Source: Isurus oxyrinchus (Eukaryota). From it: 64,000 bases of DNA. Position 1 is the first letter of the stretch. Each line of letters opens with the position of its first letter. Under the pieces are notes generated by a model that made no database searches, was not told where the DNA came from, and was given only the letters and a program-made list of their open reading frames with translations. The translations under genes and the position numbers were made by a program. The DNA is taken from positions 124,001-188,000 of the forward strand of contig JANJGN010001130.1 in assembly GCA_026770705.1 (NCBI GenBank), in the 5' to 3' direction. Shown piece by piece: positions 15,683 through 64,000 of the stretch.

Positions 15683-15688
15683 AATAAA
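15683..15688 (+). terminator. Putative poly(A) signal of the activating-type units (also 26041-26046 and 43043-43048)
   Basis: AATAAA at the same position in all three paralogous 3' UTRs. Confidence 0.5.
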
Positions 15689-16032
15689 ATTACATTGATT
15701 AACTCAAGTGATTAAAATGCTCAGCCTGTTCTGCAAATATTTATAGATTAAAACTCTTATTTTGCTGCCAGATTCTTGGCTCAAAGACATTACTTCATGT
15801 TGTCACTTTTTCCAGTCAGATGAATTCCTGTGCCCATCTTTATAATGGAAATTTTCAATGTAAACACGTCACATTGCAGCTGCACACAATTGCCAGTAGG
15901 TGGTGTGATATCAAAGCTGTCTTGCTGCTCAGAAAGAGAGAGAAATATTCCTGATAAATGCATGAACTTCATGTGTGCATCAGACAGTGACATCAGATGC
16001 AATTTTGTGCAATTTGTGCAATGTATTTTAGA

Positions 16033-24918: not shown

Positions 24919-25058
24919 ACAGTGGAGGAGAGATTCTGCACGTGATCCTGATCCTGGGAATACGAGCTGTGATATTCCTTGTGGCTGTGGTTATCACTAT
25001 CGCTGGAGTCTGTGTCTGGGAGAGACAAACAGTGAAAGGAAGTCGACAGACTGTTTGA
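24919..25058 (+). CDS. Unit 5 TM + short tail exon with intramembrane Arg (activating type)
   Basis: TTCTCTAG|24919, phase 1: DSGGEILHVILILGIRAVIFLVAVVITIAGVCVWERQTVKGSRQTV*. Confidence 0.85.
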
Positions 25059-40797: not shown

Positions 40798-41920
40798 GTG
40801 AGTGTGCACAGACTTCAACATCACTCTCAGGTTCAAACACTACACAAATACACACAAATATACAGACCTAAGCAGACACCTGCAGACACACAATCCCACA
40901 TGTATGAGTACACACAAAGACACACTCACAAACAAACACCCTATCACATACTGCCCTGTGGGTTACCTGACCTCCCTCAGTGCTGCACCGGACTATTGAC
41001 CTCGATTCTGGGTTTTGTGTTCCCTTTCATATTTATGGAAGAATATGGAAATTGCAAGGTCTATTACAGACACTCAGATGCACAGAGATACTCAGATGCA
41101 CAGAGATACTCACAGATACACTCTGCCTCTCCAACTCTCTATCCTCCTTTAAGAAGTTTCCTGAAACCTAATCCTTTGACGAGTCACCTGTCCTAACTCC
41201 TCTTACATGATTTTGTGTGAAATTTTGTTTGAGTATCTGAGAGTAAGAGAGAGGTGGAGAGGTTTAGGAAGGGAATTCCTGTTGTTGAAAAGCTTAGATC
41301 ATGTTCTCAGCTTTCCAGTGCCCATTTTTCACATGATGTCCATGTTCATAATGGGGATTGCCTATGTAAACGTCACGCTGTAGTTACACTCTCCCACCAG
41401 TGGTGGCACGGTCACACTTAACCCTTGCATCCCCAAGCTTTTCAAGCAATTTCCCTTCCTAATTTGCTACTATTCACCTCGACCACTCCCTGTGGGAGCG
41501 AGTTCCACATTCTCCCCTCTCTCTGGGTAAAGATTGGAACTGTTTATTAAGCGGGGGGTGTAAGTCTGTTGGGGAGGCCATCTCGATCCTGCCCGATTCG
41601 CACACGTGTCCGAGATGGATTTCCACCCTGCACTAAACGTTTCCAGAATTTTCTACAACACAATCCTGTACACAGCGATGGAGAGAAAAATTGGACAGGG
41701 AGTCCAACAGCACAATGATCCATTCTCACCAATGTTCCACGCTAAGGGGAAAGTTCCGATTGTCCACTCTTAGAGTGTTTACAATGAAAACATTCATTCC
41801 ACATTGAATCCCAGTGGATGGGTCAATAATACAGCAAATGTTGCAGTGATATGAAGCTTGATTGTTCAGCCAGAGTGAGAGATTGAAAGCGGAGATGATT
41901 TCTTTCTGTGTGTTCTCTAG

Positions 41921-42060
41921 ACAGTGGAGAAGAGATTCTGCACGTGATCCTGATCCTGGGAATACGAGCTGTGATATTCCTTGTGGCTGTGGTTATCACT
42001 ATCGCTGGAGTCTGTGTCTGGGAGAGAAAAACAGTGAAAGGAAGTCGACAGACTGTTTGA
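41921..42060 (+). CDS. Unit 6 TM + short tail exon with intramembrane Arg
   Basis: DSGEEILHVILILGIRAVIFLVAVVITIAGVCVWERKTVKGSRQTV*. Confidence 0.85.
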
Positions 42061-43404
42061 AGCTTTGTGCAGCAACAATCTCATTATGGAACAGAAGGAC
42101 GGCATTCAGCCCATCGACTCCATGCTGTCTCTCTGTAGAGCAATACAGTCAGTCCCATTCCCCCGCTCTATCCCCGTATCCCTGCAAGTTTATTTCCCCT
42201 CAAGTGTCCGTCCAATTTCCGTTTGAAATCGTTCATCGTCTCCGCTTCCACCATCCTAGTAGGCAGCGAGTTCCAGCTCATTACCACTCACTGTGTAAAA
42301 AAGTTCCTCCTCACATCCCCCCTCTGCCCAAAACCTTCAATCTGTGTCCCCCAGTCCTTGTACCATCAGCTAATGGCAACAGCTTCTCTTTGTCTGCCTG
42401 ATCTAAACCCATCATCATCTTGTACACCTCGATCAGATCCCCCCTCAATCTCCTTTGCTCCAAGGAGAACAACCCCAGCTTCTCCAACCCAACCTTGTAG
42501 CTAAAATCCCTCATCCCTGGACCCATTCTGCTCAATCTCCTCCCCACCCTCTCAAGGACCCTCACTTCCTTCCCAAAGTGAGGAGACCAGAACTGGACAC
42601 AATACTCTAGTTGTGACCTAACCAGAGCTTTATAAATGTTCAGCATAACCTCCCTGTGTTTGTACTCAATCCCTCAATTTATGAAAAGCTTATTCTTTCC
42701 ATCAGCACAAACAGCAATTTCCAAGCGGACTCCCATCAGCAGACAGAGTGCAATAAAACATCGACATGCCTGCTTCTTAATGTACGGAGAGAAACCTGGA
42801 ACGAGAGATTCTCCTTCTTCTCCTCAGCAAGCTGAAACTTTTCCTTATACCTGGTGCTCCCCAGTCCTGCTGTGTGGACACATCATAACCACGGCATTGT
42901 CTGGCTGTGTGCAGCCAACATGGTTGAATAGGAATGAACAGAAATGTGACGTTGCTAAACTCTGTTCTCTGATTGGAATGTGCTTTCTGAATGCTGCACC
43001 TTTTTCATGCTGCGATAGATTGTAAGAAGCATTTGGGTTATGAATAAAATTACATTGATTAACACAAGTGATTAAAATGCTCAGCCTGTTCTGTAGATAC
43101 TTATGGATTAAAATTCTTATTTTGCTGCCAGATTCTTGCCTCAAAGAAAAGCTTCTTGTTGTCACATTTTCTCTATTATATAAATTCCTGTGCCCATCCT
43201 TATAATAGAAATTTCCCATGTAAACATGTCACATTGTAGTTTCACACTCCTGCCAGTGGTGGTGCCATTCCAAAACTGTCTTGCTGCACAGACACAGTGA
43301 GAAATATTCTCGATGTGTACATGATGTTGTTGTTACACAGACATCAGGCGGAATCTTGGGCAGTGCCTAGAATGCACTTAGGACAGTGCACACCACACTC
43401 AGAA

Positions 43405-45417: not shown

Positions 45418-45867
45418 GTAAGTAACGGAACGATTGGAATTCACTTCCACCACCAACACCGTCCTTTGATGATGTTGTGACTTTATAAAGACAGATTCCA
45501 ATGATTGATGCCTTTGAAAGATTTCTACTGATTATTGAGATCTGGGTGTGAGGCTCAAGTCTGTTGTACAGAACATCTTTCTAGCTCAAGGGATGAGGGA
45601 ATTGCAGAGACATGAGCTTTGGGACATCCTGAGGTGGTGAAAGGTGCTATGGAAATGCAAATCCTTCATTGTTTTACCTTCTTAAAGCCTTGTAACTCTC
45701 TGCAGAGCACCTATCATCCCACAGAGAATCAAACTATTCTGTGAAGACATTGTCTAAAAGCAGTTCTGATCTCTCGAGAGCTGTTGGACAAGAGGTGAGG
45801 TCTCATTAACTCCTTTCTCTTTCAGAACTTCAGAGTTAGATGCTGAGGAAATATCTGGGAGTGGACA

Positions 45868-45907
45868 ATGATCGGGAAATCTTACTTCCTCCTGTCACTT
45901 CTCCAAG
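45868..45907 (+). CDS. Unit 7 leader exon (inhibitory-type Siglec-like receptor, 596 aa)
   Basis: MIGKSYFLLSLLQ, AAG|GTAATA. Confidence 0.85.
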
Positions 45908-46767: not shown

Positions 46768-47136
46768 TTGGACTGTCACAAGAGTGGAAAGGTGACACTC
46801 CACGAGAGGTGACAGCGCAGGAAGGTTTCTGTGTACAGATTCCATGTCATTACAGTTATCCATCACATTTGGAAAATCAACCGCGAGGTGGAGTCTGGTT
46901 TAATAATGAGAAACAGATTCCCTGGGCTCCTATTGCCTTTCACTCCAAGGATCACAGTCACGAGTTACCACGGTTCCGCCATCGGACCCGGCTGTCTGGA
47001 GACCTGAAAGATGGCGACTGTTCCCTGATTATAAACAACATCACACGGGAAGATGCAGGACCTTATTTTTTCAGAATAGAATTTGACAATGGTCCGAGCT
47101 ATAACTATTACCCTGTAACCCAGCTTCATGTTTCTG
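46768..47136 (+). CDS. Unit 7 V-set exon
   Basis: 369 nt open; EGFCVQIPC, DCSL, GPYFFRIEFDNGPSYNY. Confidence 0.9.
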
Positions 47137-47646: not shown

Positions 47647-47995
47647 CTGTCTTCCTCTCCACTGATACTGTCAGACCTGCTGAGTCTTTCCAGCAATTTT
47701 TGTTTTTGTTTCAGATTTCCAGCATCCACAGTATTCTGCTTTTAACTCCAATCTCTGGTCTGAGCCTCTTCTCTCATCCAGTGTTCTCAATTCACATGTC
47801 TCGGAGTGAACGTGTATTAAGCTGAGAGACAGAAACACTACTGCCAAAGAGCAAGAAAATCTTTCCTGATCGTTGTAACCTCTCAGTTCTGATATCATCC
47901 TTGTAAAAGTGCTTTCGCTTGTGGGACTGTGGTTTCTAGTTGAACTGATGCTTCACGTTATATTTCTCTAAAAGGATCCATTCTCTGTCTGTTAG

Positions 47996-48292
47996 ATTTC
48001 ACAGATAAACCCACGATATTCCCTGCTGAAATTATTGCAGGAAAGCGTGTGGATGTAAGCTGCACCTTCAACACAATGTGCAATGGAACAGCAGCACCTG
48101 TCTTAACCTGGGACATTCCCACTGACGTACGTGGATCAGTCTCAAACACTGTAACTCAGCATGGTGTCACTCTGACCTATACTTCTGTTCTGACCCTGAT
48201 CCCATCACTCAAACACCATGGACACACACTCAGCTGCAGAGTGAGATATCCATCTGTTTCAGCAGAGCAGACCCTCGTACTAACTGTGCAAG
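47996..48292 (+). CDS. Unit 7 C2-set exon
   Basis: 297 nt open, AG/GT intact. Confidence 0.9.
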
Positions 48293-48511
48293 GTAAGAAC
48301 GGACACCCTTCATTCTACATTAGCTAGAAAGCTCTACTTAGTACATTGCAAGATCCCACAATTGCATTGTGTTTAGCAACAAATCAATAGTCTTTAACTG
48401 ATACAAATTCACCTCTGACACTGCAGCAGTCCCTGAATACTGATTCTCCAACACTGCAGCACTCCCTCAGTACTGAGTCTTGTTCACAATGAAATCTTTA
48501 ACTGTTCTTAG

Positions 48512-48604
48512 ATGCACCACAGAATCTCTCATTTACTTCGCTTGATATGATTAATGCTTCATCGATCAATATAATTGAGGGGTTCATAACCATCACTGTG
48601 GAAT
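48512..48604 (+). CDS. Unit 7 mini-exon: Ig exon collapsed in frame to a 31-aa linker
   Basis: TTCTTAG|48512..48604|GTGAGT, 93 nt; [31 protein letters not shown]. Confidence 0.65.
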
Positions 48605-48627
48605 GTGAGTTAATGCAAACTTCAACA

Positions 48628-49244: not shown

Positions 49245-49526
49245 ATGCACCACGGAATCTCTCAATTACTTCTCTTGGTGTGATTAACGCTTTATCGATC
49301 GATGTAATTGAGGGGAATTCTGCAGTGATAATCTGCTCTGTCGAGAGCTTCCCAGCTTCTAACCTGACGTGGCGACATCTTAATGTCCCAATGAACAGAA
49401 CAAATTCCAACAATGAGCTGTGGTTGGTGATTCCTCACGTTACATCCAGGGACACTGGAGACTATCAGTGTGTGGCAGAGAATGAACATGGAGCAGTGGA
49501 GGGGTTCATAACCATCACTGTGGAAC
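49245..49526 (+). CDS. Unit 7 third Ig (C2/I-type) exon
   Basis: 282 nt; APRN..EGNSAVIICSVESFPASNLTW..DTGDYQCVAENEHG. Confidence 0.9.
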
Positions 49527-50186: not shown

Positions 50187-50468
50187 ATGCACCACAGAAT
50201 CTCTCATTTACCTCTCTTGATATGATTAATGCTTCATCGATCAATATAATTGAGGGGAATTCTGCAGTGATAATCTGCTCTGTCGAGAGCTTCCCAGCTT
50301 CTAACCTGACGTGGCGACATCTTAATGTCCCAATGAACAGAACAAGTTCCAACAATGAGCTGTGGTTGGTGATTCCTCACGTTACATCCAGGGACACTGG
50401 AGACTATCAGTGTGTGGCAGAGAATGAACATGGAGCAGTGGAGGGGTTCATAACCATCACTGTGGAAT
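50187..50468 (+). CDS. Unit 7 fourth Ig exon (tandem duplicate of the third)
   Basis: 282 nt, near-identical to 49245-49526. Confidence 0.9.
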
Positions 50469-51270
50469 GTGAGTGTGGAGATACATTTGTTTGTTTGTTG
50501 TCTCCGTGGTCTCCGTGGAGCCATTGGGATCGTGTTGTTTTTAATCCAGTTTTCTTCAGTCCTCGCTCAGTCCACGTTATCCACACATCCAATTTTTCCT
50601 CTCCCTTTCTGTTTTTGCTCTCAGTTTCTCCTTCAATGGTTGTGAGGACAAGGCTGTCAGGTCTTCGTTTCCAATCTCCGTACTTGACGACCTTTCTCTC
50701 TCTAACTGTCCTGAACAACCCTTTTAATTGCTGAACTTCTCATTCTTTAATTGATAAATATTATATATAAATGTTACATGTTGAAATGCAATACCTGTAT
50801 TCATAAATTGCTTAGAAATTACTAAACATTCAACAGCCAGTGAAGCATTATCGAAGTGAGCTCACTGTTGTAATGTAGGAAACACAGGTACTGATTTGTG
50901 CACAGCAAGATCCCGCAAACCACCGTGTGATAATGACCTGATAGTCGATTATTTCAGTGAGGTTGGTTGTTACATGTGTAGAGACTACATACCCTTTAGG
51001 GAGGGAAGCATGTGGATGTGACTCCAGTCTCAGACACCAACATGGTTAACTCTTACCTGCCCTCTGAACTAGTCTCCCAGTTTGGGACAAACCAGTGGTT
51101 CAGGAGGAAGACCCCCCACCACCTTCTCAAGGGGAAACTAGGGATGGACAATAAATGTCAGCATTGCCCGAGAATGAGTATTTAAACACTGAGTGAGTGT
51201 ATCGCTTCTCGAGATACATCGGAGCATCATTGTAAATCTGTAGTGCAGTAATTAATGGCTGTTTTTACAG

Positions 51271-51367
51271 GTAGAGACTCTAGTAAATGGACAGTAGGAT
51301 TGTTCACGGCTGGGATCATGTTGAGTGTTTTCCTGGCTGGAATCTTCATCTTCATCTGTGTGAGAAA
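51271..51367 (+). CDS. Unit 7 neutral TM exon
   Basis: TTTTACAG|51271..|GTAAGT, phase 1-2: CRDSSKWTVGLFTAGIMLSVFLAGIFIFICVRK. Confidence 0.88.
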
Positions 51368-51539
51368 GTAAGTCTGAAGATTTAACTTGATTTTAATATA
51401 AACATTTGTTGAGGACTAATTAGACAGTTTTTACAAAGGGCCAGCACAGGCACGATGGGCTGAGTGGCTTCCTCCTGAGCTGTGAGATTTTTAATTCTTT
51501 CATCGAATGTGGCTGTCACTGGTGAGGCCGCTATTAATT

Positions 51540-51955
51540 GCCCATCTCTAATTGCCCCTTGAGAAGGAGGTAGTGAGCTGCCTTCTTGACCCGCTGCAGT
51601 CCATGAGGTGTAGGTACACCCACAGTGCTGTTAGAGAGGGAGTTCCAGGATTTTGACCCAGCGACAGTGAAGGAACGGTGATATATTTCCAAGTCAGGAT
51701 GGTGAGTGACTTGGAGGGCAACTTCCAGGTGGTGGTGTTCCCATGTGTCTGCTGCCCTTGTCCTTCTAGATGGTAGAGGTCGTGGGTTTGGAAGGTGCTG
51801 TTGAAGGAGCCTTGCTGAGTTGCTGCAGTGCATCTTGTAGATGGTACACACACTGCTTCCACTGTGTGTTCATGGTGGAGGGAGTGAATGTTTAATGTGG
51901 GGGATGGGGTGTAGATCAATCGGGCTGCTTTCTCCTGGATGGTGTCAAGCTTCTT
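51540..51955 (-). mobile_element. LINE 3' fragment (duplicated at ~54385-54795)
   Basis: Reverse complement matches the + strand LINE end at ~58520-58940. Confidence 0.75.
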
Positions 51956-52090
51956 GATTCTGTGCTTTGTGCAGAAGTGATTTAAAGAGACAGTCCCTGT
52001 CATTGGTGTAAGGTTACAGTGGGCTCTGTGTCTGTGCTGCACTGACTCTCTGCTATATGATAACCACAGTGTGATATTGTGTTATTGCAG

Positions 52091-52172
52091 GAGAAAGACA
52101 GCGATGGAGGAGAGAGTTTCAGGGACCAGTGACATTGCATTGACCCCCAGTCCACTCTCTGTGAAGCGCCAG
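52091..52172 (+). CDS. Cytoplasmic exon 1, copy A
   Basis: TTGCAG|..CAG|GTACAG, 82 nt, phase 2-0: RKTAMEERVSGTSDIALTPSPLSVKRQ. Confidence 0.8.
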
Positions 52173-52307
52173 GTACAGGAGCTGTTTACACTCACTCCAA
52201 AGCTTCAATCTTAGTGTGTAGACAACACATGTCCCAGATTCCCAGCCCAGTTACCCACTGATTTGTACCTGTGGAGTCAGCAATGGTTCAGTATCACGCT
52301 GCCTCTC

Positions 52308-53062
52308 TGTTATGACACAGCAACTGGTAAAGGCTGTTGTTTAAAATCCCAGAAGGAAACTTTAAACAACTGTCATAACCTATATTTCCCAGTGGAATGT
52401 TTGAGATGCAGCTTTAGATTCAGGAATAAGACCATCAGTTCTCGGGATGGTTTTATATCAAACTACATGAGACATTTATTAATTTACACAAGTTAAACAT
52501 ATGCACATGGCTACAAACTAGTATTATCATAACTTTTTAACAAATTCTCTAACTAATCTCCTCTAAGATAACCCATAGAATTTAAGCAGATTCCAGGCAA
52601 AGCATTTTCACCTCACAAATTCCAAATGAGGTTCCTTTCACTTTGGTTCCTTTGCAGACAGGTGTAGGCTTACAGCTGCTTTGCTGTTACAAGCCTCTGC
52701 TCTGCACACACAAAACTGCTCAAGTTATACCCAGCTCTTCTCTTTGAATGTAAATTCTCATTGTATCATCAGGACCTTTGAACTCCATTTCTTCTAATAA
52801 TAAATCCCCTTTCATAGTATCAATTTTATTCGTATTATAAACGTTGATTGGTTTAAGATTTCACCCCCAGACATTGCGCTGTTCAAAAATACAAATTGTC
52901 TCTTTGCCTCCCTGTTTACATCTCAAAACTACGATACATCAAAGTACCCAGACTGGCTGGCTTTAATCCAATTAAAACACACACACACACACCCACAGAC
53001 TAAACCACTATTTTAATAAAAATAATTTCCAAAACATGATATTCATTAATCGCATCATGACA
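52308..53062. mobile_element. Solo-LTR-like element (second copy 55146-56026)
   Basis: TGTTATGA...TCATGACA / TCATAACA termini. Confidence 0.65.
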
Positions 53063-53533
53063 TTCTCTCTCTCTATCCCTACCTCCCTTTCTTTCTCTCT
53101 CTCTTCTGTCTCTCATCCTCTCTCTGATTACAAGGGTGATGTCAATGAGCCTCACACCAGACACTTGAGTGCAGAATCCAAGCCATCACTCACCAGAGCC
53201 ATTACCGAGGGAGTGCGAGACTGACAGAGGGTCAGTACTGAGGGAGTGCTGCACTGCCGGAGGGTCAGTACTAAGGGAGTGCTGCACTGTCGGAGGGTCA
53301 GCACTGAGGGAGTGCGAGACTGACAGAGGGTCACTACTGAGGATGTGCTGCACAGTGGGGGGGATCAGAACTGAGGGAGCACTGCACTGCCGTAGGTGGT
53401 TTCTTTCAGATGACATGAGAGAGAGAGTTAAACCCATTGAGACCGACTGACACTAGCGAGGCTGCACAATAATTTAACCCTATCAGTGCCAGTAAATGAT
53501 GTGAGGATGTCTTCTGTTTCCATTTCTCTGTAG

Positions 53534-53782
53534 GGTAAACAGAACGTGCTGATTACTGAGTCCCAGAACACAACCAGAGACACAACTAGCGAGGGGGAGA
53601 CCCCAGTTCCCCGGGGTCTCTCTGAAGGTCCAGTGGGAGGCGATGCTGGACATTGGCACACCGACAATCCCGTTGCCCTTCTCTACTCCAATCCCCAAGT
53701 TTTGAGGATATCCAGTGGTGATGGTTCTGTCCACAGGGAAGAGGAGACGGAATACGCACAGATCAGGTTCGAGCATAACTGA
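53534..53782 (+). CDS. Terminal cytoplasmic exon, copy A: degenerate ITIM (LLYSNP) + ITSM (TEYAQI)
   Basis: CTGTAG|53534, phase 0, open to TGA at 53782. Confidence 0.8.
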   Translation, partial: GKQNVLITESQNTTRDTTSEGETPVPRGLSEGPVGGDAGHWHTDNPVALLYSNPQVLRISSGDGSVHREEETEYAQIRFEHN

Positions 53783-54928
53783 ATGAGAAATGGGGAGAGT
53801 GAGTGAGGAGGTGTGGGTGTGGGGGTAGGGATTGAGATTCCTGGGAACAGGAAACAACCCACTGGGGGAGAGGGGGAGAGAGGGAGGAAGGGATGCAATT
53901 GGGCTGCGGTTGGTGTGGTTTGGAATGAAATGCTTCTCCAGAGAGGACTGGATGCTGAGCCATTGGGGAGTGAGATTCACTGTCTCTCTCTCTCTCTCTC
54001 TCTCTCTCCCTCTCTCTCTCTTTCTTTCTGTGTCTGTCTCTCATTCCCTATCTCCAGCTCCTCCTTTAAGATGCCCGTTAATAACTGACTTTGTTGACTC
54101 AGCTGTTGGTCTCCTGTCCCTAATATCTCCTCATGTGCCTCAGAGTCAGGTGAAGATGTGACTAACAATCCCCGGATGAGCCTTGGGACATTTTGCTACA
54201 TTGAAGGTGCTATATAAATGCAAGTAGTTGTAGTAACTCTGATCTGCTTCGATTAACAATGGAACCACAAAGGCTCCTTCGACAGGGCGTGTGTGCAGCA
54301 GGATCACAGTAAATACATTGAGCTGTGAGATTTTAAATTCTTTCATCGAATGTGGCTGTCACTGGTGATGTCAGCATTAATGCCCATCCCTAATTGCCCT
54401 TGAGAAGGTGTGGTGAGCTGCCTTCTTGACCCGCTGCGGTCCATGTGGTGTAGGTACACCCACACTGCTGTTAGGGGGGAGCTCCAGGATTTTGACCCAG
54501 CGACAGTGAAGGAACGGTGATATATTTCCAAGTCAGGATGGTGAGTGACTTGGAGGGGAACTTCCAGGTGGTGGTGTTCCCATGTGTCTGCTGCCCTTGT
54601 CCTTCTAGATGGTAGAGGTCGTGGGTTTGGAAGGTGCTGTTGAAGGAGCCTTGCTGAGTTGCTGCAGTGCATCTTGTAGATGGTACACACACTGCTGCCT
54701 CTGTGTGTTCATGGTGGAGGGAGTGAATGTTTAATGTGGGGGATGGGGTGTAGATCAATCGGGCTGCTTTGTCCTGGATGGTGTCAAGCTTCTTGATTCT
54801 GTGCTTTGTGCAGAAGTGATTTAAAGAGACAGTCCAGTCGTTGGTGTAAGGTTACAGTGGGCTCTGTGTCTGTGCTGCACTGACTCTCTGCTATATGATA
54901 ACAACAGTGTGATATTGTGTTATTGCAG

Positions 54929-55010
54929 GAGAAAGACAGCGATGGAGGAGAGAGTTTCAGGGACCAGTGACATTGCATTGACCCCCAGTCCACTCTCTGT
55001 GAACCACCAG
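54929..55010 (+). CDS. Cytoplasmic exon 1, copy B
   Basis: 82 nt: RKTAMEERVSGTSDIALTPSPLSVNHQ. Confidence 0.8.
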
Positions 55011-56421
55011 GTACAGGAGCTGTTTACACTCACTCCAAAGCTTCAATCTCAGTGTGTAGACAACACATGTCCCAGATTCCCAGCCCAGTTACCCACTGAT
55101 TTGTACCTGTGGAGTCAGCAATGGTTCAGTATCATGCTGTCTCTCTGTTATGATACAGCAACTGGTAAAGGCTGTTGTTTAAAATCCCAGAAGGAAACTT
55201 TAAACAACTGTCATAACCTATATTTCCCAGTGGAAGGTTTGAGATGCAACTCTAAATTCAGGAATAAGACCACCAGTTCTCAAGATGGTTTTATATCAAA
55301 CTACATGAAACATTTATTAATTTACACAAGTTAAACATATGCACATGGCTACAAACTAGTATTATCATAACTTTTTAACAAATTCTCAAACTAATCTCCT
55401 CTAAGACAACCCATTGTCTTTAAGCAGACACCAGGCAAAGCATTTTCACCTCACAAATTCCAAATGAGTTTCCTTTCACTTTGGTTCCTTTGCCGACAGG
55501 TGTAGGCTTACAGCTGCTTTGATGTTACAAGCCTCTGCTCTGCACAAACAAAACTGCTCAAGTTATACCCAGCTCTTGAGTGTAAAGAAGATGGAGATTG
55601 ACAGGCTGCTGATTGGTAAGGGGATCAAAGGTTAGGGGAGAAGGTGGGAAAATGGACCGAATGGTCTAATTACTCATCCTAAGTCTTAGTCTTATGGCTT
55701 CTGTTTGAAGGTAAATTCGCAATGTATCATCAGGACCTTTGAACTCCATCTCTTCTAACAATAAATCCCCTTTCATCGTATCAATTTTATTAGTAATATA
55801 AACGTTGATTGGTTTAAGATTTCACTCTCAGACTTTGAATGTTTTATTTAAAAATGCAAATTACCACTTTACCTCTTTGTTTACATCTCAAAACTACTAT
55901 ACATCAAAGCACCCAGACTGGCTGGCTTTAATCCAATTAAAATACACACAGACACACACACAGACTAAACCTCTGTTTAAAAAGACAGTTTGCAATTACA
56001 TTACATACATTAATAGATTCATAACACTCTGTCTCTATCCCTCCTCTATCCCTCTCTCTCATCCTCTCTCTGATTACAAGGTTCATGTTATTGAGCCTCA
56101 CACCAGGCACCTGTGTGCAGCATCCAAGCCGTCACTCACCAGAGCCATTACCGAGGGAGTGCGGGACTGACAGCGGGTCAGTACTGAGGGAGTGCTGCAC
56201 TGTTGGAGGGTCAGTACTGAGGGAGTGCTGCACTGTTGGAGGGTCAGCACTGAGGGAGTGCTGCACTGTTGGAGGGTCAGTACTGAGGAAGTGCTGCACT
56301 GCCATAGGTGGTTTCTTTTATCCGGTAGGAGAGAGAGAATTAAATGACTCCGCACAATAATTTAACCCTATCAGTGCCAGTAAATGATGTGAGGATGTCT
56401 TCTGTTTCCATTTCTCTGTAG

Positions 56422-56670
56422 GGTAAACAGAACGTGCTGATTACTGAGCCCCGGAACACAACCAGAGACACAACTAGCGAGGGGGAGACCCCAGCTCCCC
56501 GGGATCTCTCTGAAGGTCCAGTGGGAGGCGATGTTGGACATGGGAACTCCGACAAACCCGACGAGCTTTTCTACGCCAACATCAACTTTTCAAAGCTGCC
56601 CGGCGGTGACAGGACTGTGCACAGGAGCGAGGACACGGAATACACACAGATCAGGTTCCAGAAAAACTGA
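56422..56670 (+). CDS. Terminal cytoplasmic exon, copy B: ITIM (ELFYANINF) + ITSM (TEYTQI)
   Basis: CTGTAG|56422, open to TGA at 56670; matches the CD33-related Siglec pattern ELxYAxLxF...TEYSEI. Confidence 0.88.
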   Translation, partial: GKQNVLITEPRNTTRDTTSEGETPAPRDLSEGPVGGDVGHGNSDKPDELFYANINFSKLPGGDRTVHRSEDTEYTQIRFQKN

Positions 56671-56863
56671 GTGTGAAACAGGGAGCGGGGCTGTGGGGTG
56701 TGTGCAGCCAACATGGCCAAATAGTAATGAACAGAAATATGATGTTGCTGAACTTTTTTTATTGTTTCTGAGTGAGCTTTCTGAATGCTGCACCTTTTTC
56801 CATGCTGTAAAAGATTGTGAGAAGCTTATGAATTATGTATAATTTTACATCTGTTAATACAAG

Positions 56864-58950
56864 GTGAGGTGACAGTGACTGCCTTTGACATCAAGGCTGC
56901 ATTTGACCGTGTGTGGCATCTAGGATCCCGAGTAAAACTGGAATCAATGGGAATCAGGGGTGGTACGAAAGTATAATAATTTGCTTAATATTTTCCTGGT
57001 TTGTTGTAAACTAGGTTTATGGGTGTGAGTGTAGATGGGTCTGTCTGTGTGGCTTAATTACATCTGGAGTCAGGTAGACTGCAAGTTTGAGATTATCAAA
57101 AGAAGCTAGATGTAGAAATGTAATTGAAATGCTAGTGAGTGAACATGGAGGCTGACTTAGCATGTAAGGTGTGAGGGGAATTTGCATTTTTAGATAAGTG
57201 ACGGGATTGTTTGGATTTCAAAGGGCTATTGGTCTGTTTACAATGAGACCGATATGCAAGGCAAAGGAGTGTGTTTATTTTTCCCCAAAGGTTATTGACA
57301 ACATTGGCAACATGAAAGTTTTTATATTATGGGAAAAGTATAATTCCAAAGACATATGGAACAATGAAATTTACATATCAAAGAGAGAGGAACATCAACA
57401 AAGGAGAATGAAAGGCTATTTTGGGGACCATGTAAAATCTAACAAGAGTGTGTGAATCAGCCTTGAAGAAGCCTCCAGGCATTTGTCCATAGGTCTGTTA
57501 TGTTCAGTGACTATAGATTGAGAAAGCCATTTGGAAATCCACTCTCAAGTGTGTTCTGTGTTAACTTGCTGGTTTTGTTTTTAAATCTAAAATCTATTTT
57601 GGTTTATTGCCTAAAAGGAGTTTTACTGCTCACTTCCAGACTTCCCAATGCCTGACCACCATCTTCAAGGTTAATTCGGAAGTTTAGGATTTGTTATAAT
57701 GGTAACCGTATCCTTATGTGTGTGCTTTAAATATTAAATAAATATTAAAATTTAATTTTTAAGATCTCTAAATGTCTTGGTTGACACATTACTCCTGAAT
57801 TCAGTGCACACATCTCATAATAAATACAAATTGCAAAACCGTTGTGATAGTGTGACCAAGTTTCCCTTGTGGATTTGGTCCCCCTGGCACACATCATCTA
57901 CCACATCATAACAGAGGGAAAACTCTCCGCTGGTTGGAGCCATACCCAGCACAAAGGAAGATAGTTGTGGTTGTTGGAGGTCAATCATCTCAGTTCCAGG
58001 ACATCACTGCAGGAGTTCCTCAGGGTAGTGTCCTCGGCCCAACCATCTTCAGCTGCTTCATCAATGACCTTCCTTCCATCATAAGGACAGAAGTGTGGAT
58101 GTTCACTAACGATTGCACAATGTTCAGCACCATTCACGGCTCCTCAGATACTGAAGCAGCCCTTGTCCAAATGCAGCAAGACCTGGACAATATTCAGGCT
58201 TGCGCTGACAAGTGTCAGGCAATGACCATCTCCAATAAGAGAGAATCTAACCATCGCCCCTTGATGTTCAATGGCATTACCATTGCTGAATCCCCCACTA
58301 TCAACATCCTGGGGATTACCATTGACCAGAAACTGAACTGGACTAGCCATAAAAACACTGTGGCTACAAGAGCAGGTCAGAGTCTGGGAATCATGCAGTG
58401 AGTAACTCACTCCAGACTCCCCAAAGCCTGTCCACCACCTTCAAGGCACAGGTCAGGAGTGTGATGGAAGACTCTCCACTTGCCTGGATGAGTGCAGCTC
58501 CAACAAGATTCAGTAAACTCAACACCACTCAGGACAAAGCAGCCCCGCTAGATCCACTCTCTGCACAACCGATGAACAGTAGCAGCAGTGTGTACCATCT
58601 ACACGGTGCACTGCAGGAACTCACCAAGACTCCTTAGGCAGCACCTTCAAACACACGACCACTACCATCTCGAATTACAGGGCAACAGATACATGGTAAC
58701 ACCACCACCTGGAAGTTACCCTCCAAGTCACTCAGCATTCTGACTTGGAAATATATCACCGTTCCCTCACTGTCACTGGGTCCAAATCCTGCAACTCCCT
58801 CCCTAACAGCACTGCGGGTGTACCTACCCCACATGGACTGCAACAGTTCAAGACGGCAGCTCACTACCACATTCTCAAGGGCTATTAGGGATGGGCAATA
58901 ATTCTGGCCTAGACAGCGCCACCCACATCCCATAAATGAATATAAAAAAC
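56864..58950 (+). mobile_element. 5'-truncated LINE (RT fragment) interrupted by a solo LTR at 56961-57913
   Basis: FDIKAAFDRVWH...GVPQGSVLGP; LINE reads through across the TG...CA insert; ACAAG on both flanks. Confidence 0.8.
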
Positions 58951-59989
58951 AAGCAATTAAAATGCTCAGACATTTCTGTACATTGTTTTTCAGATGTGAA
59001 TACCATTCTCTGGTGAATAATTCCATTCTCAAGGCACCATTTCCTGTTATCACATGCCCTTTTCATTATTTACAATCATGTACCTTCATTTGTAATGTAA
59101 CATTCCCATGTAAACATGTCACACTATAGTTACACCCTCCTGCCAATGGCGGTGCTCTAGTGTCATAGTTTTACCTCTCAGAGGCTGGAGGAAATATATC
59201 CACTGTGTTTACAATATTAGAAACACTCAGGGGTGACCAGGGGATTCTTTAGGTCGTGTTTACGATGTTGTTAAGATACAAGGGGCCAGTGGGATTTTTC
59301 CTACTGCGTTTACAATGTTGTTAAGACAGGATTCGGGTGAAAGATGACCTTCAACCCATCATCCCTCTCATGCCGAGAGAGAACAATAGCCTTAAGTCAG
59401 GGCCTGGCAGTTCGTGGGAACAGTCCCTGTGCCCAATTGGATAGGCTCAAAGTGAACCCAATGTTGGGTCTTGAGCCTCAAGATCCTGGAACAGGCACAG
59501 AGTGGACACCTCGGATGGATGTCAAAAACCCCATGGACACTTTTTGGGTGAAGTGTAGGGGGTGGGTATGGAGTCGGGTGGGGCAGTTATCCCCAGTGTC
59601 CTGGGACCAATATTTATCCCTAAACCAACATCATTAAAAAAAACAGATGTTCTGGGTCTGTATCTCACTGCTGTTTGTGGGATCCTGCTGTGCAGAAATT
59701 GTCTGCCATGTTTCCTACTGTTCCACAGCATCCACTGTTCAAAAACATTTCTCAGGGAATGAAGGACTATCTTTGAAGTGCAGATCCCCGTTGTAATGTA
59801 GGAAACACCACAGTCAATTTGCGCACAGCAAGCTCCCACAAACAGCAATGTGAGAATGAGCCAGACCATCTGTTTTTAGGGTGTTAGTTGGGGGTAAATA
59901 TTGGCCCCAGTATTCTAAGGCACTCGATACAGGGTTGAATTTAAGAAGTTTTTGAAGTGTCCGGCACAGTTTTCTAAAGCTCCTCTCAG

Positions 59990-62290
59990 ACCCCACCTGT
60001 AGTCACTGGGGTCAGTCCTGGACCCCGCACCTCAGGGAGGGGATATTGTCCTCGGAGGGGCTGCAGCCCAGAGTCACCAGAACGATCCCGGGGCTGAAAG
60101 GGTTAAATCCCGAGGACAGGTTGCACAGACCAGGCTTGTGTTCCCTCGAGTCTCGAAGATGAAGGGGTGATCTAATCGAGGGGTTTAAGATGATTAAAGG
60201 ATTCGATGGGGTCGATAGAGAGAAACNNNNNNNNNNNNNNNNNNNNNNNNNNNNNNNNNNNNNNNNNNNNNNNNNNNNNNNNNNNNNNNNNNNNNNNNNN
60301 NNNNNNNNNNNNNNNNNNNNNNNNNNNNNNNNNNNNNNNNNNNNNNNNNNNNNNNNNNNNNNNNNNNNNNNNNNNNNNNNNNNNNNNNNNNNNNNNNNNN
60401 NNNNNNNNNNNNNNNNNNNNNNNNNNNNNNNNNNNNNNNNNNNNNNNNNNNNNNNNNNNNNNNNNNNNNNNNNNNNNNNNNNNNNNNNNNNNNNNNNNNN
60501 NNNNNGGTGTGGGGGTGAGGGTGGNNNNNNNNNNNNNNNNNNNNNNNNNNNNNNNNNNNNNNNNNNNNNNNNNNNNNNNNNNNNNNNNNNNNNNNNNNNN
60601 NNNNNNNNNNNNNNNNNNNNNNNNNNNNNNNNNNNNNNNNNNNNNNNNNNNNNNNNNNNNNNNNNNNNNNNNNNNNNNNNNNNNNNNNNNNNNNNNNNNN
60701 NNNNNNNNNNNNNNNNNNNNNNNNNNNNNNNNNNNNNNNNNNNNNNNNNNNNNNNNNNNNNNNNNNNNNNNNNNNNNNNNNNNNNNNNNNNNNNNNNNNN
60801 NNNNNNNNNNNNNNNNNNNNNNNNNNNNNNNNNNNNNNNNNNNNNNNNNNNNNNNNNNNNNNNNNNNNNNNNNNNNNNNNNNNNNNNNNNNNNNNNNNNN
60901 NNNNNNNNNNNNNNNNNNNNNNNNNNNNNNNNNNNNNNNNNNNNNNNNNNNNNNNNNNNNNNNNNNNNNNNNNNNNNNNNNNNNNNNNNNNNNNNNNNNN
61001 NNNNNNNNNNNNNNNNNNNNNNNNGGTGTGGGGGTGAGGGTGGGTGTGANNNNNNNNNNNNNNNNNNNNNNNNNNNNNNNNNNNNNNNNNNNNNNNNNNN
61101 NNNNNNNNNNNNNNNNNNNNNNNNNNNNNNNNNNNNNNNNNNNNNNNNNNNNNNNNNNNNNNNNNNNNNNNNNNNNNNNNNNNNNNNNNNNNNNNNNNNN
61201 NNNNNNNNNNNNNNNNNNNNNNNNNNNNNNNNNNNNNNNNNNNNNNNNNNNNNNNNNNNNNNNNNNNNNNNNNNNNNNNNNNNNNNNNNNNNNNNNNNNN
61301 NNNNNNNNNNNNNNNNNNNNNNNNNNNNNNNNNNNNNNNNNNNNNNNNNNNNNNNNNNNNNNNNNNNNNNNNNNNNNNNNNNNNNNNNNNNNNNNNNNNN
61401 NNNNNNNNNNNNNNNNNNNNNNNNNNNNNNNNNNNNNNNNNNNNNNNNNNNNNNNNNNNNNNNNNNNNNNNNNNNNNNNNNNNNNNNNNNNNNNNNNNNN
61501 NNNNNNNNNNNNNNNNNNNNNNNNNNNNNNNNNNNNNNNNNNNNNNNNNNNNNNNNNNNNNNNNNNNNNNNNNNNNNNNNNNNNNNNNNNNNNNNNNNNN
61601 NNNNNNNNNNNNNNNNNNNNNNNNNNNNTGAGGATGGGGGTGGGGGGTGAGGGTGGGGGGTGAGGGTGGNNNNNNNNNNNNNNNNNNNNNNNNNNNNNNN
61701 NNNNNNNNNNNNNNNNNNNNNNNNNNNNNNNNNNNNNNNNNNNNNNNNNNNNNNNNNNNNNNNNNNNNNNNNNNNNNNNNNNNNNNNNNNNNNNNNNNNN
61801 NNNNNNNNNNNNNNNNNNNNNNNNNNNNNNNNNNNNNNNNNNNNNNNNNNNNNNNNNNNNNNNNNNNNNNNNNNNNNNNNNNNNNNNNNNNNNNNNNNNN
61901 NNNNNNNNNNNNNNNNNNNNNNNNNNNNNNNNNNNNNNNNNNNNNNNNNNNNNNNNNNNNNNNNNNNNNNNNNNNNNNNNNNNNNNNNNNNNNNNNNNNN
62001 NNNNNNNNNNNNNNNNNNNGGTGAGGGGGGGTCCAGAACAAGGGGGCAGAACATTAACATTGGAGCCAGGCCGTTCAGGGGGTGATGTCAGGAAGCAATT
62101 CTTCACACAAAGCGGGGGTGGAAATCTGCAACTCTCTCCCCCAGAAAAAGCTGTCGAGACTGGGAGGGGTCAATTGTCAATTTCAAAACTGAGATTGGGA
62201 GATTTTTGTTGGGTCGGGGGTTAAGGGTCACGGAACCGAGGCGGGTGGATGGGGTTAAGATACAGATCGGACGTGATGTAGTCAAATAGC
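59990..62290 (+). mobile_element. CR1-type LINE 3' fragment split by N-masked/gapped sequence (60226-62019) containing GGGGGTGAGGGT-type repeat islands
   Basis: GDLIEGFKMIKGFDGVDREK before the Ns; GSRTRGQNINI...RKQFFTQ after them. Confidence 0.65.
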
Positions 62291-62299
62291 CGAAACAGA

Positions 62300-64000
62300 T
62301 GAGGCTGAGGATAAGGAAGATGAGGAGGGGGATGAGGAGGGGGATGAGGAGGAGGATGAGGAGGAGATGAGGAGGGAGATGAGGAGGGGGATGAGAAGGG
62401 GGATGAGGAGGGGGATGAGGAGGGAGATGAGGAGGGGATGAGGAGGGAGTTGAGGAGGGGGATGAGAAGGGAATGAGGAGGGGGATGAGGAGGGGATGAG
62501 GAGGGAGATGAGGAGGGGGATGAGGAGGGAGATGAGGAGGGGGATGAGAAGGGGGATGAGGAGGGGGATGAGGAGGGAGATGAGGAGGGGATGAGGAGTG
62601 GATAAGGAGGGGAGGGAGAGGGATGAGGAGGAAGATGAGGAGGGGGATGAGGAGGGAGATGAGGAGAGGGATGAGGAGGGGGATGAGGAGGGGATGAGGA
62701 GGGGACGAGGAAGGGGATGAGGAGGGAGATGAGGAGGGGGATGAGGAGGGGATGAGGAGGGGAGGGAGAGGGATGAGGAGGAAGATGAGGAGGGGGATGA
62801 GGAGGGAGATGAGGAGGGTGATGAGGAGGGGGATGAGGAGGGGGATGAGGAGGGGGATGAGGGGGGATGAGGAGGGGGATGAGGAGGTAGATGAGGCAGG
62901 GACGAGGAGGGGGAGGGGGAGCAGGAGGGGGATGAGGTTGGGGATGAGGTGGGGAATGAGGAGGGGGATGAGGAGCGGACGAGGAAGGGGATGAGGAGGG
63001 GGATGAGGAGCAGACGAGGAAGGGGATGAGGAGGGGGATGAGGAGGGGATGAGGAGGGGAGCAAGGGAGGATGAGGAGGAAGATGAGGAGAGGGATGAGA
63101 GGGGGATGAGGAAGGGATGAGGTGGGAGATGAGGAGGGGAAGAGGAGGAGGATGAGGATGGGGATGAGGATGGGGATGAGGAGGGGGAAGGGGATGAGGA
63201 GGGGGATGAGGAGGGAGATGAGGCAGGGACGAGGAGGGGGAGGGGGAGCAGGAGGGGGATGAGGTTGGGGATGAGGTGGGGAATGAGGAGGGGGATGAGG
63301 AGCGGACGAGGAAGGGGATGAGGAGGGGGATGAGGAGCAGACGAGGAAGGGGATGAGGAGGGGGATGAGGAGGGGATGAGGAGGGGAGCAAGGGAGGATG
63401 AGGAGGAAGATGAGGAGAGGGATGAGAGGGGGATGAGGAAGGGATGAGGTGGGAGATGAGGAGGGGAAGAGGAGGAGGATGAGGATGGGGATGAGGATGG
63501 GGATGAGGAGGGGGAAGGGGATGAGGAGGGGGATGAGGAGGGAGATGAGGCAGGGACGAGGAGGGGGAGGGGGAGCAGGAGGGGGATGAGGTTGGGGATG
63601 AGGTGGGGAATGAGGAGGGGGATGAGGAGCAGACGAGGAAGGGGATGAGGAGGGGGATGAGGAGGGGATGAGGAGGGGAGCGAGGGAGGATGAGGAGGAA
63701 GATGAGGAGAGGGATGAGAGGGGGATGAGGAGGGGATGAGGTGGGAGATGAGGAGGGGGATGAGGAGGGGGATGAGGATGGGGATGAGGAGGGGGAAGGG
63801 GATGAGGAGGGGAATGAGGTGGGGGCTGAGGAGGGGGATGAGGAGGGGGTTGAGGATGAAGAGAGGGATGAGGAGGGGGATGAGGATGGGGATGAGGATG
63901 GGGATGAGGAGGGGGAGGGGGAAGGGGATGAGGACGGGATGAGGAGGGGGATGAGGAGGAGGATGAGGGGGGGTGAGGAGGGAGATGAGGAGGGGGATGA
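62300..64000. repeat. Purine-rich simple repeat (GGAGGGGGATGA)n with higher-order duplications
   Basis: Directly visible. Confidence 0.95.

What the first reader, a model, noticed from the sequence alone, without database searches (positions are those of the whole stretch)
51271..56670. One TM exon followed by two alternative cytoplasmic cassettes: a splice-switchable signalling tail
Seen: a ~2.84-kb tandem duplication (from ~51477 and ~54320) copies both cytoplasmic exons but not the TM exon. All four exons are open with intact splice sites. Exon 1A/1B are phase 2-0, so including both breaks the frame and they are effectively mutually exclusive. Tail B has a canonical ITIM + ITSM; tail A keeps the ITSM but has P at Y+3 of the proximal tyrosine. 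Inference: the same ectodomain could signal through SHP-1/2 (B) or through an ITSM-only output (A).
Basis: partly seen in the sequence, partly recalled or inferred. Interest (0 to 1): 0.8.

Follow-up and report, generated by a model that had tools for sequence, protein, structure and literature searches.

The report
Shark Siglec gene, doubled signalling tail
A shark immune-receptor gene of the Siglec type carries the two exons for its inner signalling tail twice in a row, a layout shared by related shark genes, where the first copy is skipped, strung in front of the second, or ended early rather than working as a simple either/or switch.

Summary
One TM exon (51271-51367) is followed by two tandem copies of a two-exon cytoplasmic module. 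Copy A is 52091-52172 plus 53534-53782. Copy B is 54929-55010 plus 56422-56670. All four exons are open with AG/GT borders. Tail B has LFYANI (ITIM) and TEYTQI. Tail A has LLYSNP and TEYAQI.

The gene is the inhibitory member of a Siglec cluster, most similar to lamniform shark models.

The either/or reading is only partly supported.
- A and B belong to two old tail lineages. The A type is one clade (100/99) with Pro at Y+3 in 16 of 16 sequences, so A is not a fresh lesion.
- A donor (CAG|GT at 53766/53767), 13 nt before the A stop, lets the whole A module be read in frame ahead of B.
- RefSeq models of a white-shark relative carry A+B in series, B only, 1A+2B, and an A tail ended by frameshift.
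- In this window, contigs of one public run join TM to 1B and 1B to exon 2. Use of A shows only as depth above intron level.
- No AATAAA/ATTAAA follows 2A.

The scan noted the same layout on three other pieces of this genome. I found no paper describing it.

The parts
45826..45906 (+). Leader (signal peptide) exon of the gene; approximate borders
   Evidence: tblastn of white-shark models P0014 and P0036; ag| before it and |gtaata after it.
46770..47136 (+). V-set (sialic-acid-binding type) Ig exon; approximate start
   Evidence: Pfam V-set 9.9e-12 and Ig_CD22 8.8e-08. Best solved relatives are the Siglec-5, -7, MAG, -8 and CD33 V-sets. YFFRIEF aligns with YFFRVE of Siglec-5 and YFFRME of Siglec-7, and the Cys pattern aligns too.
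47983..48293 (+). C2-set Ig exon
   Evidence: Pfam C2-set_2 1.4e-08; 89-90% identical to white-shark models.
49245..49526 (+). Ig_3/I-set exon
   Evidence: Pfam Ig_3 5e-12; tblastn 86-92%; borders.
50187..50467 (+). Ig_3/I-set exon
   Evidence: Pfam Ig_3 2.9e-12; tblastn up to 98.9% to basking-shark model P0017; borders.
51271..51367 (+). Single transmembrane exon. It ends with 2 nt (AA) of a split codon, and its donor is gtaagt.
   Evidence: Translation. It is the only copy in the window. X4 contig record 16 lies on 51269-51367 with both ends unaligned, and X1 has a loose end at 51368 that reads on into exon 1.
51476..53815 (+). Duplicated unit A. It starts in a highly repeated element 108 nt after the TM exon and ends about 33 nt after the A stop.
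52091..52172 (+). Exon 1A (82 nt; juxtamembrane segment ending KRQ)
   Evidence: It differs from 1B at 2 nt, both non-synonymous.
53534..53782 (+). Exon 2A: 82 codons plus TGA. Proximal motif LLYSNP (not an ITIM), distal motif TEYAQI.
   Evidence: It falls in the A-type clade with first-position cassettes of white-shark and basking-shark models. X1 depth is 859 at 53564 and 1675 at 53882, against 10-550 in introns.
53764..53772 (+). Internal donor CAG|GTTCGA (exon would end at 53766) made by the Arg-Phe codons. It leaves AG, which with the first G of exon 1B gives Arg and keeps the frame.
   Evidence: Sequence; frame arithmetic. The equivalent junction (...AQIR|RKTA...) is used in models P0001, P0014, P0015, P0028-P0031 and P0035. 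Its use in this window is not shown.
53816..54318 (+). Spacer after module A. It is unique in the window, contains a CT microsatellite, and has no AATAAA/ATTAAA.
   Evidence: X1 mean depth falls to 53 in 53916-54109.
54319..56702 (+). Duplicated unit B
54929..55010 (+). Exon 1B (82 nt; ends NHQ)
   Evidence: An X1 contig on 1B is preceded by the last 15 nt of the TM exon. Three X1 contigs run from 55010 into the first 17 nt of exon 2 (table 7).
56422..56670 (+). Exon 2B: 82 codons plus TGA. Proximal motif LFYANI (ITIM), distal motif TEYTQI (ITSM / ITIM-like).
   Evidence: It is 91-93% identical to the second-position tails of white-shark models. X1 depth is 6,000-68,000.
56671..57840 (+). 3' untranslated region of the gene (inferred end). 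The block 56696-56863 is shared with the 3' ends of the three upstream genes. The first AATAAA signals are at 57737 and 57819.
   Evidence: X1 depth stays at about 24,000 up to 57000. The polyA site itself was not seen.

Best explanation
This is the 3' end of the inhibitory member of a paired Siglec cluster in a shark close to the lamniforms. The gene runs leader, V-set, C2-set, Ig exons, one TM exon, then the two-exon cytoplasmic module twice in tandem.

The two modules are not fresh copies.
- Their motif-bearing ends belong to two old tail lineages.
- The B type (LxYANI ITIM plus TEYxQI) is shared with carpet sharks and ground sharks.
- The A type (LxY[AS]NP plus TEYAQI) was seen only in lamniform models.
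- The surrounding intron and the 5' exon parts have been kept 93-99% alike. I infer gene conversion.

The doubled module is a family layout. I infer that it is used by combinatorial splicing.
1. TM>1B>2B skips A and gives the classical ITIM+ITSM tail. These junctions are seen here in contigs, and this is probably the main form.
2. TM>1A>2B gives the same tail with two changed residues.
3. TM>1A>2A'(to 53766)>1B>2B gives one long tail with four tyrosines.
4. 2A'>2B out of frame, or 2A read to its own stop, gives a tail with only the A motifs.

Forms 2-4 are inferred from annotated isoforms of a white-shark relative and from frame arithmetic. They are not shown for this locus.

From the motif rules I infer signalling as follows. 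B recruits SHP-1/2. The A proximal tyrosine cannot act as an ITIM but keeps pYxN, a Grb2-type site by recalled consensus. It also keeps the ITSM-like distal site.
For: - Structure and frames.
- Siglec identity.
- Cluster context, with three upstream genes that have an Arg-bearing TM exon.
- Uneven divergence: 0 synonymous and 11 non-synonymous differences in exon 1 plus codons 1-46 of exon 2, against dS 0.46 and dN 0.38 in codons 47-82.
- Tree of 33 distinct exon-2 peptides: the A type is one clade (100/99, 15 rows from Carcharodon, Cetorhinus and the window). WIN_2A sits with first-position cassettes of both species (90/92).
- Pro at Y+3 in 16 of 16 A-type sequences and a distal Tyr in 15 of 16.
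- White-shark 'myelin-associated glycoprotein-like' isoforms: X1, X2 and X6 carry A+B in series; X3 carries A then a frameshift end; X4 is 1B-2B; X5 is 1A-2B.
- Further double-module models: P0028, P0030, P0015, P0035 (white shark) and P0001 (basking shark).
- Contigs of run X1: TM>exon 1, TM>1B, 1B>exon 2. Exon 2B depth is 6,000-68,000, exon 2A 859-1675, introns 10-550.
- B's 3' flank is shared with the other genes of the cluster. A's is not.
Against: - The isoforms of relatives are automatic gene models.
- The internal donor is weak by eye (T at +3, C at +4).
- No junction into or out of module A was shown for this window. One search listed only a few of 700-odd loose ends and 15 of 255 joints.
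- Contig depth is not a measure of expression, and A-type exons of paralogues at 95% or more could add to the depth on 2A.
- X4 record 17, which is spliced into a 2A-like exon, has 5 differences in 119 nt and may come from a paralogue.
- The runs are RNA only by guess.
- Gene conversion is inferred from the identity pattern alone.
Confidence: 0.6

Rival explanations
1. One reading: a true either/or switch. Module A (1A + full 2A, ending at its own stop with its own polyA site) and module B are mutually exclusive terminal cassettes. The same ectodomain then signals through either an ITSM-only tail or an ITIM+ITSM tail.
For: - Both modules are open with identical splice borders, and 1A+1B together break the frame.
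- In X1 the stretch just after the A stop (53882) has depth 1675. That is above the intron level of 10-550, and depth drops to 53 by 53916-54109, as an RNA end there would give.
- A-type tails serve as the sole, stop-terminated tail in at least 8 distinct models (P0002/12, P0019, P0020/38/40, P0033, P0034, P0037, P0043).
Against: - There is no AATAAA/ATTAAA between 53783 and 54928, only TATAAA, AGTAAA and AATACA variants at 54213-54312.
- A lacks the 3' block shared by the cluster's genes.
- No white-shark isoform of the closest double-tail gene ends at A's own stop. Three of six join A to B in series, and one ends A by frameshift.
- The drop in depth coincides with a sequence variant at 53882-53896 that is also seen in X18.
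Confidence: 0.2
2. Module A is a passenger. It is a duplicated copy that is spliced out, or gives only unproductive RNA, and the receptor has only tail B.
For: - The only junctions displayed for this window are TM>exon 1, TM>1B and 1B>exon 2.
- Depth on 2A is 4-80 times lower than on 2B.
- There is no canonical polyA signal after 2A.
Against: - Both A exons are open, with unchanged splice sites.
- A's motif half falls in a clade conserved across three taxa, with Pro at Y+3 in 16 of 16 and a distal Tyr in 15 of 16.
- First-position cassettes are included in models of two other species.
- X1 depth on 2A and just after it is above intron level.
Confidence: 0.15
3. Assembly artefact: two haplotypes or paralogues were wrongly stitched in tandem.
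For: - The 5' part of the units is 95-99% alike.
- The unit borders lie in a very abundant repeat (depth).
Against: - The copies differ by indels of up to about 120 nt and by 31% in the last 100 coding nt.
- The same A-then-B order occurs in independent assemblies of two other species and in several genes.
- The same layout was noted at three other places of this genome.
- X1 and X4 contigs lie on the spacer 54048-54406, which links A to B (table 8).
Confidence: 0.03

Closest known systems
RefSeq models of Carcharodon carcharias 'myelin-associated glycoprotein-like' isoforms X1-X6 (XP_041037215-221) and other double-tail models (XP_041037134, XP_041037155, XP_041037157, XP_041037065; Cetorhinus maximus XP_078389619)
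   Same: - The same TM segment and the same two-module tail.
- An A-type cassette comes first and a B-type or A-type cassette second.
- The window's 2B is 91-93% identical to their second cassette, and 2A is 86% identical to the first cassette of P0035.
   Different: - They are automatic predictions in other species. None equals the window's protein.
- Their DNA and RNA support could not be inspected.
- I found no paper that describes them (listings).
Mammalian CD33-related Siglecs (Siglec-5, -7, -8, -9, CD33)
   Same: - V-set with the sialic-acid arginine and the Siglec cysteine pattern, followed by C2-set domains.
- A tail with a proximal ITIM and a distal TEYxxI/V motif, encoded by two exons after the TM exon. 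The mammalian exon layout is recalled.
- Pairing with activating genes that have a charged TM residue (the Siglec-5/14 pair is recalled).
   Different: - Mammalian genes have one tail module. Here there are two in tandem, and the first lacks the ITIM.
- Orthology to any mammalian Siglec was not tested.
Alternative cytoplasmic tails by splicing in Ig-superfamily receptors: L-MAG/S-MAG (Siglec-4), CEACAM1-L/S, PECAM-1 exon skipping (all recalled, none read here)
   Same: One ectodomain is given tails with different tyrosine motif content by exon choice.
   Different: Those cases use inclusion or skipping of single unique exons. Here a whole duplicated two-exon module is skipped, chained or ended.
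Mutually exclusive exons born from tandem exon duplication (general mechanism, recalled)
   Same: Tandem homologous exons of equal length and phase. Joint inclusion of 1A and 1B breaks the frame.
   Different: - The unit holds two exons, including the terminal one.
- An in-frame serial route exists.
- Exclusivity is not shown, and it is contradicted in relatives.

Membership tests
Siglec family | N-terminal V-set Ig domain of the Siglec type | tested here: met
   Pfam V-set 9.9e-12 and Ig_CD22 8.8e-08. The 18 best solved relatives are all Siglecs (Siglec-5, -7, MAG, -8, CD33, -10, sialoadhesin, -15).
Siglec family | Conserved arginine of the sialic-acid site (F strand, YFFR.E) and the Siglec cysteine pattern | tested here: met
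   YFFRIEF aligns with YFFRVE of Siglec-5 and YFFRME of Siglec-7. QEGfCVqiPC and dCSL align with their cysteines. That this Arg is the essential one is recalled.
Siglec family | C2-set/Ig domains between the V-set and the membrane | tested here: met
   C2-set_2 and two Ig_3/I-set exons.
Siglec family | Binding of sialylated glycans | not testable with these tools
   Needs a glycan-binding assay.
ITIM (S/I/V/L-x-Y-x-x-I/V/L; consensus recalled) | Hydrophobic residue at Y-2 and I/V/L at Y+3 | tested here: met
   Tail B: LFYANI. 14 of 19 B-type sequences keep the full motif; 2 lack the Tyr, 2 have Ser at Y+3, and P0011 has it but is cut short after it.
ITIM (tail A) | I/V/L at Y+3 of the proximal tyrosine | tested here: not met
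   Tail A: LLYSNP. Pro at Y+3 in 16 of 16 A-type sequences.
ITSM (T-x-Y-x-x-V/I; consensus recalled) | Motif present at the distal tyrosine | tested here: met
   TEYAQI (A) and TEYTQI (B). Binding of SAP/EAT-2 or SHP-2 cannot be tested here.
Mutually exclusive exon cassette | Tandem homologous exons of equal length and phase | tested here: met
   1A and 1B are 82 nt each. 2A and 2B each hold 82 codons plus a stop. The borders are the same.
Mutually exclusive exon cassette | Joint inclusion is impossible or unproductive | tested here: not met
   1A+1B breaks the frame. However, 1A+2A'(to 53766)+1B+2B stays in frame, and relatives are annotated that way.
Mutually exclusive exon cassette | Transcripts carry one cassette or the other, never both | tested here: inconclusive
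   Contigs show TM>1B and 1B>exon 2 only. Most loose ends and joints were not listed.
Alternative last exon | Own polyadenylation signal after the upstream terminal exon | tested here: not met
   No AATAAA/ATTAAA in 53783-54928, only weak variants at 54213, 54308 and 54312. Real 3' ends could not be seen, because the runs were contigs only.

The most novel reading that the evidence does not exclude
Lamniform sharks have turned the Siglec tail into a modular, splice-programmable signalling cassette. An ITIM-less module (pYxNP plus ITSM), invented in that lineage and kept by selection, is placed by tandem duplication in front of the ancestral ITIM+ITSM module. Splicing then decides whether a cell makes the inhibitory tail, the ITIM-less tail or a four-tyrosine composite. 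One sialic-acid sensor would thus have graded or qualitatively different outputs. That all 11 differences between A and B outside the motif half are amino-acid changing would then reflect selection to make the two modules differ.
Probability: 0.25. Interest if true: 0.65.

Novelty: new variant of a known kind. Interest (0 to 1): 0.42.

Why it matters
Inhibitory Siglecs set the threshold of innate immune cells by reading 'self' sialic acids, and in mammals each has one fixed ITIM plus ITIM-like tail. Suppose a shark lineage really builds tails from repeated modules and picks among them by splicing. That would be a different, genome-encoded way to diversify the output of one receptor. It would also give a natural experiment on what the proximal ITIM adds to the distal motif.

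On present evidence it is a family trait of these sharks that is visible in automatic annotation but undescribed in papers. For this locus only the ordinary inhibitory form is directly seen.

Tried and rejected
- Word search with the 2A peptide alone gave nothing. The length filter shuts out full-length proteins.
- Pfam has no family for either tail exon.
- tblastn for further TM or tail exons in the window found none. The weak hits at 25784 and 42786 (E above 7) are not evidence of decayed tail exons in the upstream genes, and blastn found none either.
- A simple recent duplication is rejected. Divergence ranges from 1-2% to 31% along the unit.
- Decay of A under no constraint is rejected as the sole cause. 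Its diverged half groups with conserved A-type tails of other species.
- Ranking A against B by contig depth was tried, but it is unsafe. Short contigs fit both copies and paralogues (one search says 1826 of 3056 X1 contigs fit two places).
- Four literature searches gave no paper on shark Siglec tails. I saw only listings and abstract starts, and read no paper. Supplements were not consulted.
- I did not search or fold any joined spliced model. Frames across junctions were worked out from exon lengths and per-exon translations.
- The tree left out 2 of 35 distinct cassette rows: P0011, which is truncated, and P0026, which has a frameshift end.
- P0009 was left out of cassette extraction as an unrelated low-complexity hit.

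Full report
**Observation**

The region was read and scanned for repeats. Direct repeats 2838-2965 nt apart tile 51476-53763 against 54319-56651. A global alignment and blastn place the two units at 51476-~53815 and 54319-~56702.

- The TM exon (51271-51367, 97 nt) lies 108 nt upstream of the first unit. It is the only one in the window.
- tblastn of the five exon peptides found no further TM or tail exon.
- Exons 1A (52091-52172) and 1B (54929-55010) are 82 nt each, with identical acceptor and donor contexts.
- Exons 2A (from 53534) and 2B (from 56422) each have 82 open codons and a TGA, at 53780-53782 and 56668-56670.
- The TM exon leaves 2 nt, and exon 1 takes 1 nt plus 27 codons. Exon 2 therefore starts in phase 0, and 1A plus 1B together would break the frame.
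- Tail B reads LFYANI and TEYTQI. Tail A reads LLYSNP and TEYAQI.

**What the gene is**

Upstream open frames hit Pfam V-set and Ig_CD22, C2-set_2 and Ig_3/I-set. The V-set exon's best solved relatives are the V-sets of Siglec-5, -7, MAG, -8, CD33, -10 and sialoadhesin. Its YFFRIEF aligns with YFFRVE and YFFRME of Siglec-5 and -7, as do the cysteines.

tblastn with shark models maps one gene: leader ~45826-45906, V ~46770-47136, C2 ~47983-48293, Ig 49245-49526, Ig 50187-50467, TM, then the tails.

Three further V/C2 genes upstream end instead in an exon encoding a membrane span with an arginine and a short tail. These exons lie at 14466-14603, 24918-25055 and 41920-42057. They are 91-96% identical to the end of a white-shark 'Siglec-14' model. 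The window is therefore a paired activating/inhibitory Siglec cluster, and the finding concerns its inhibitory member.

**History of the two modules**

Identity is far from uniform.
- It is 95-99% over 51600-52399 and 93-97% over 52400-52699.
- Beyond that lie long gaps, with 75-94% identity in the aligned parts.
- It is 98% then 93% over 53473-53672.
- It is 69% over the last 100 coding nt, and homology stops about 33 nt after the stop.

Codon counts show the same split. Exon 1 plus codons 1-46 of exon 2 differ at 11 sites, all non-synonymous (0 of about 54 synonymous sites). Codons 47-82 have dS 0.46 and dN 0.38.

Neutral decay since one recent duplication cannot give 31% divergence next to introns at 1-7%. 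The motif half must have an older history.

B's 3' flank (56696-56863) is about 80% identical to the 3' ends of the three upstream genes. The spacer after A (53816-54318) matches nothing else in the window. B therefore sits at the family's ancestral 3' end.

**Relatives**

The 2A peptide alone found nothing in the word search, because of the length filter. The full HMMER search found 11 proteins. A second word search with the tail of one hit found 17.

Their names are Siglec-, CD33- or MAG-like RefSeq models of:
- Carcharodon carcharias and Cetorhinus maximus (65-76% identity; up to 86% for 2A and 91% for 2B);
- more distantly, Stegostoma, Rhincodon, Hemiscyllium, Mustelus and Scyliorhinus.

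Their tails fall into two types.
- The B type (LLYANINFSKLPSGDRTVHRSEDTEY.QIRFQKN-like) occurs in all these taxa.
- The A type (LLYANPQVFRVPSGDG.VHREEETEYAQIRF-like) occurs only in the two lamniform species and the window.

A maximum-likelihood tree was built from 33 distinct exon-2 peptides; 2 of 35 were dropped, one truncated and one with a frameshift end. It makes the A type one clade (100/99, 15 rows). It places the window's 2A with first-position cassettes of white and basking shark (90/92), and 2B among the lamniform B types. The grouping label was the motif itself, but the clade rests on many other columns.

All 16 distinct A-type sequences have Pro at Y+3, and 15 of 16 keep the distal tyrosine. 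The A type is also the sole, stop-terminated tail of at least 8 models.

**How the doubled module is used in relatives**

Eight models carry two cassettes in one tail: P0001, P0014/29/31, P0015, P0028, P0030 and P0035. The first always ends ...TEYAQIR and runs straight into [RK]K[TK]A... of the next exon 1.

In the window this junction corresponds to a donor CAG|GTTCGA at 53766/53767. It is made by the Arg-Phe codons 13 nt before the stop. It leaves AG, and with the first G of exon 1B this gives Arg and keeps the frame. The same CAG|GT sits in 2B at 56654/56655.

One white-shark gene has six isoforms:
- X1, X2 and X6 carry A+B in series;
- X4 is TM-1B-2B;
- X5 is TM-1A-2B;
- X3 is the A tail followed by ...AQISVNRTC*, which is what joining 2A' to exon 2B out of frame gives. 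The window's 2B reads VNRTC* in that frame.

From recall, RefSeq predicts extra isoforms only where transcript evidence supports their introns.

**Evidence from reads for this window**

One search for runs gave only contig-level runs, guessed to be RNA. Four were laid.

In X1, the run closest to the window:
- A contig on the TM exon reads on into the start of exon 1.
- One contig on 1B is preceded by the last 15 nt of the TM exon.
- Three contigs run from 55010 into the first 17 nt of exon 2. Those three span the two nucleotides that tell 1B from 1A.
- Depths are about 5,960 on the TM exon and 6,000-68,000 on 2B and its 3' flank to 57000.
- Depths are 10-550 at seven intron positions, 859 at 53564 (2A), 1675 at 53882 (after the A stop), and 53 on average in 53916-54109.

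X4 has three relevant contigs. One is exactly the TM exon with both ends unaligned. One begins 17 letters before lying on 53532-53650, so it is spliced into a 2A-like exon; it has 5 differences in 119 nt and may come from a paralogue. Others lie on 2B at similar depth.

No junction into or out of module A of this locus was displayed. However, only 24 of about 720 loose ends and 15 of 255 joints were listed, contigs drop rare forms, and many contigs fit both copies. B-only splicing is therefore shown. A is present in RNA-like data above intron level, but its splicing is open.

No AATAAA or ATTAAA lies between the A stop and exon 1B. The first AATAAA after B are at 57737 and 57819.

**Reading**

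The most likely account is a family-wide modular tail used by combinatorial splicing. B-only is the main form here. The serial or frameshift-ended A forms are inferred by homology (confidence about 0.6).

The rivals are:
- A as an unused passenger (about 0.15);
- an assembly artefact (about 0.03). This is made unlikely by the indels and 31% divergence, by the same order in other assemblies and genes, and by contigs on the linking spacer.

Functionally, by recalled motif rules, B should recruit SHP-1/2. A's proximal site cannot be an ITIM but keeps Y-x-N (Grb2-type) and the ITSM-like distal site. None of this was tested.

**Novelty**

The scan noted the same layout on three other pieces of this genome. 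One has four modules, one has a dead first copy, and one has a first copy with a stop. Their follow-ups reached a similar serial-or-skipped reading. I reached mine, before seeing them.

Four literature searches (listings and abstract starts only) showed no paper on shark Siglec tails. The layout is implicit in automatic annotation of two species.

I class it as a new variant of a known kind, namely inhibitory Siglecs and alternatively spliced ITIM tails. Interest is moderate.

Noticed in passing
14466-14603, 24918-25055, 41920-42057 (+): Three upstream V/C2 Siglec genes end in an exon for a membrane span with an arginine and a short tail. The exon is 91-96% identical over 46 aa to the end of a white-shark 'Siglec-14' model (P0036). 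These look like activating partners of the inhibitory gene, making a paired-receptor cluster.
   Followed up: partly
56696-56863 vs 15543-15708, 25901-26066, 42903-43068: A 168-nt block just after the B stop is about 80% identical to blocks about 1 kb after the activating-type last exons of the three upstream genes. It is a shared 3' region of the cluster. Module A has no such block.
   Followed up: partly
52092-52172 / 54930-55010 and 53534-53671 / 56422-56559: All 11 nucleotide differences between A and B in exon 1 and the first 46 codons of exon 2 change the amino acid, and none is synonymous (about 54 synonymous sites). By chance alone this would happen in roughly 4 in 100 cases by my rough estimate. 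It is either selection for difference or luck.
   Followed up: partly
48508-48610 (+): A collapsed Ig exon. It keeps the start ([24 protein letters not shown]) and the end (FITITVE) of the repeated Ig_3 exon with splice-like borders, but lacks the roughly 190-nt core. A CA-rich microsatellite follows.
   Followed up: no
51476-51960 and 54319-54800 (+); 58637-59062: The 5' edge of each duplicated unit is a very abundant interspersed repeat, with summed contig depth in the millions in run X18. A related copy lies downstream of the gene. It may have mediated the duplication or the later conversion.
   Followed up: no
53882-53896: Runs X1, X6 and X18 differ from the window here (G>C at 53882, C>G at 53896, and a loose end at 53893 with the same letters in X1 and X18). 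This is a small indel-type variant or a paralogue just after the A stop. It blurs the reading of RNA depth there.
   Followed up: no
30288-32877 (+): A run of long open frames between two Siglec genes looks like a LINE-type endonuclease/reverse-transcriptase element. I did not check it against Pfam.
   Followed up: no
60227-62019; 62106-64000: Four N runs (279, 500, 579 and 350 nt) are followed by a G-rich, low-complexity stretch with very long open frames on the minus strand (Pro/Ser/His-rich). This looks like simple sequence, not a gene. The N runs were left alone.
   Followed up: no
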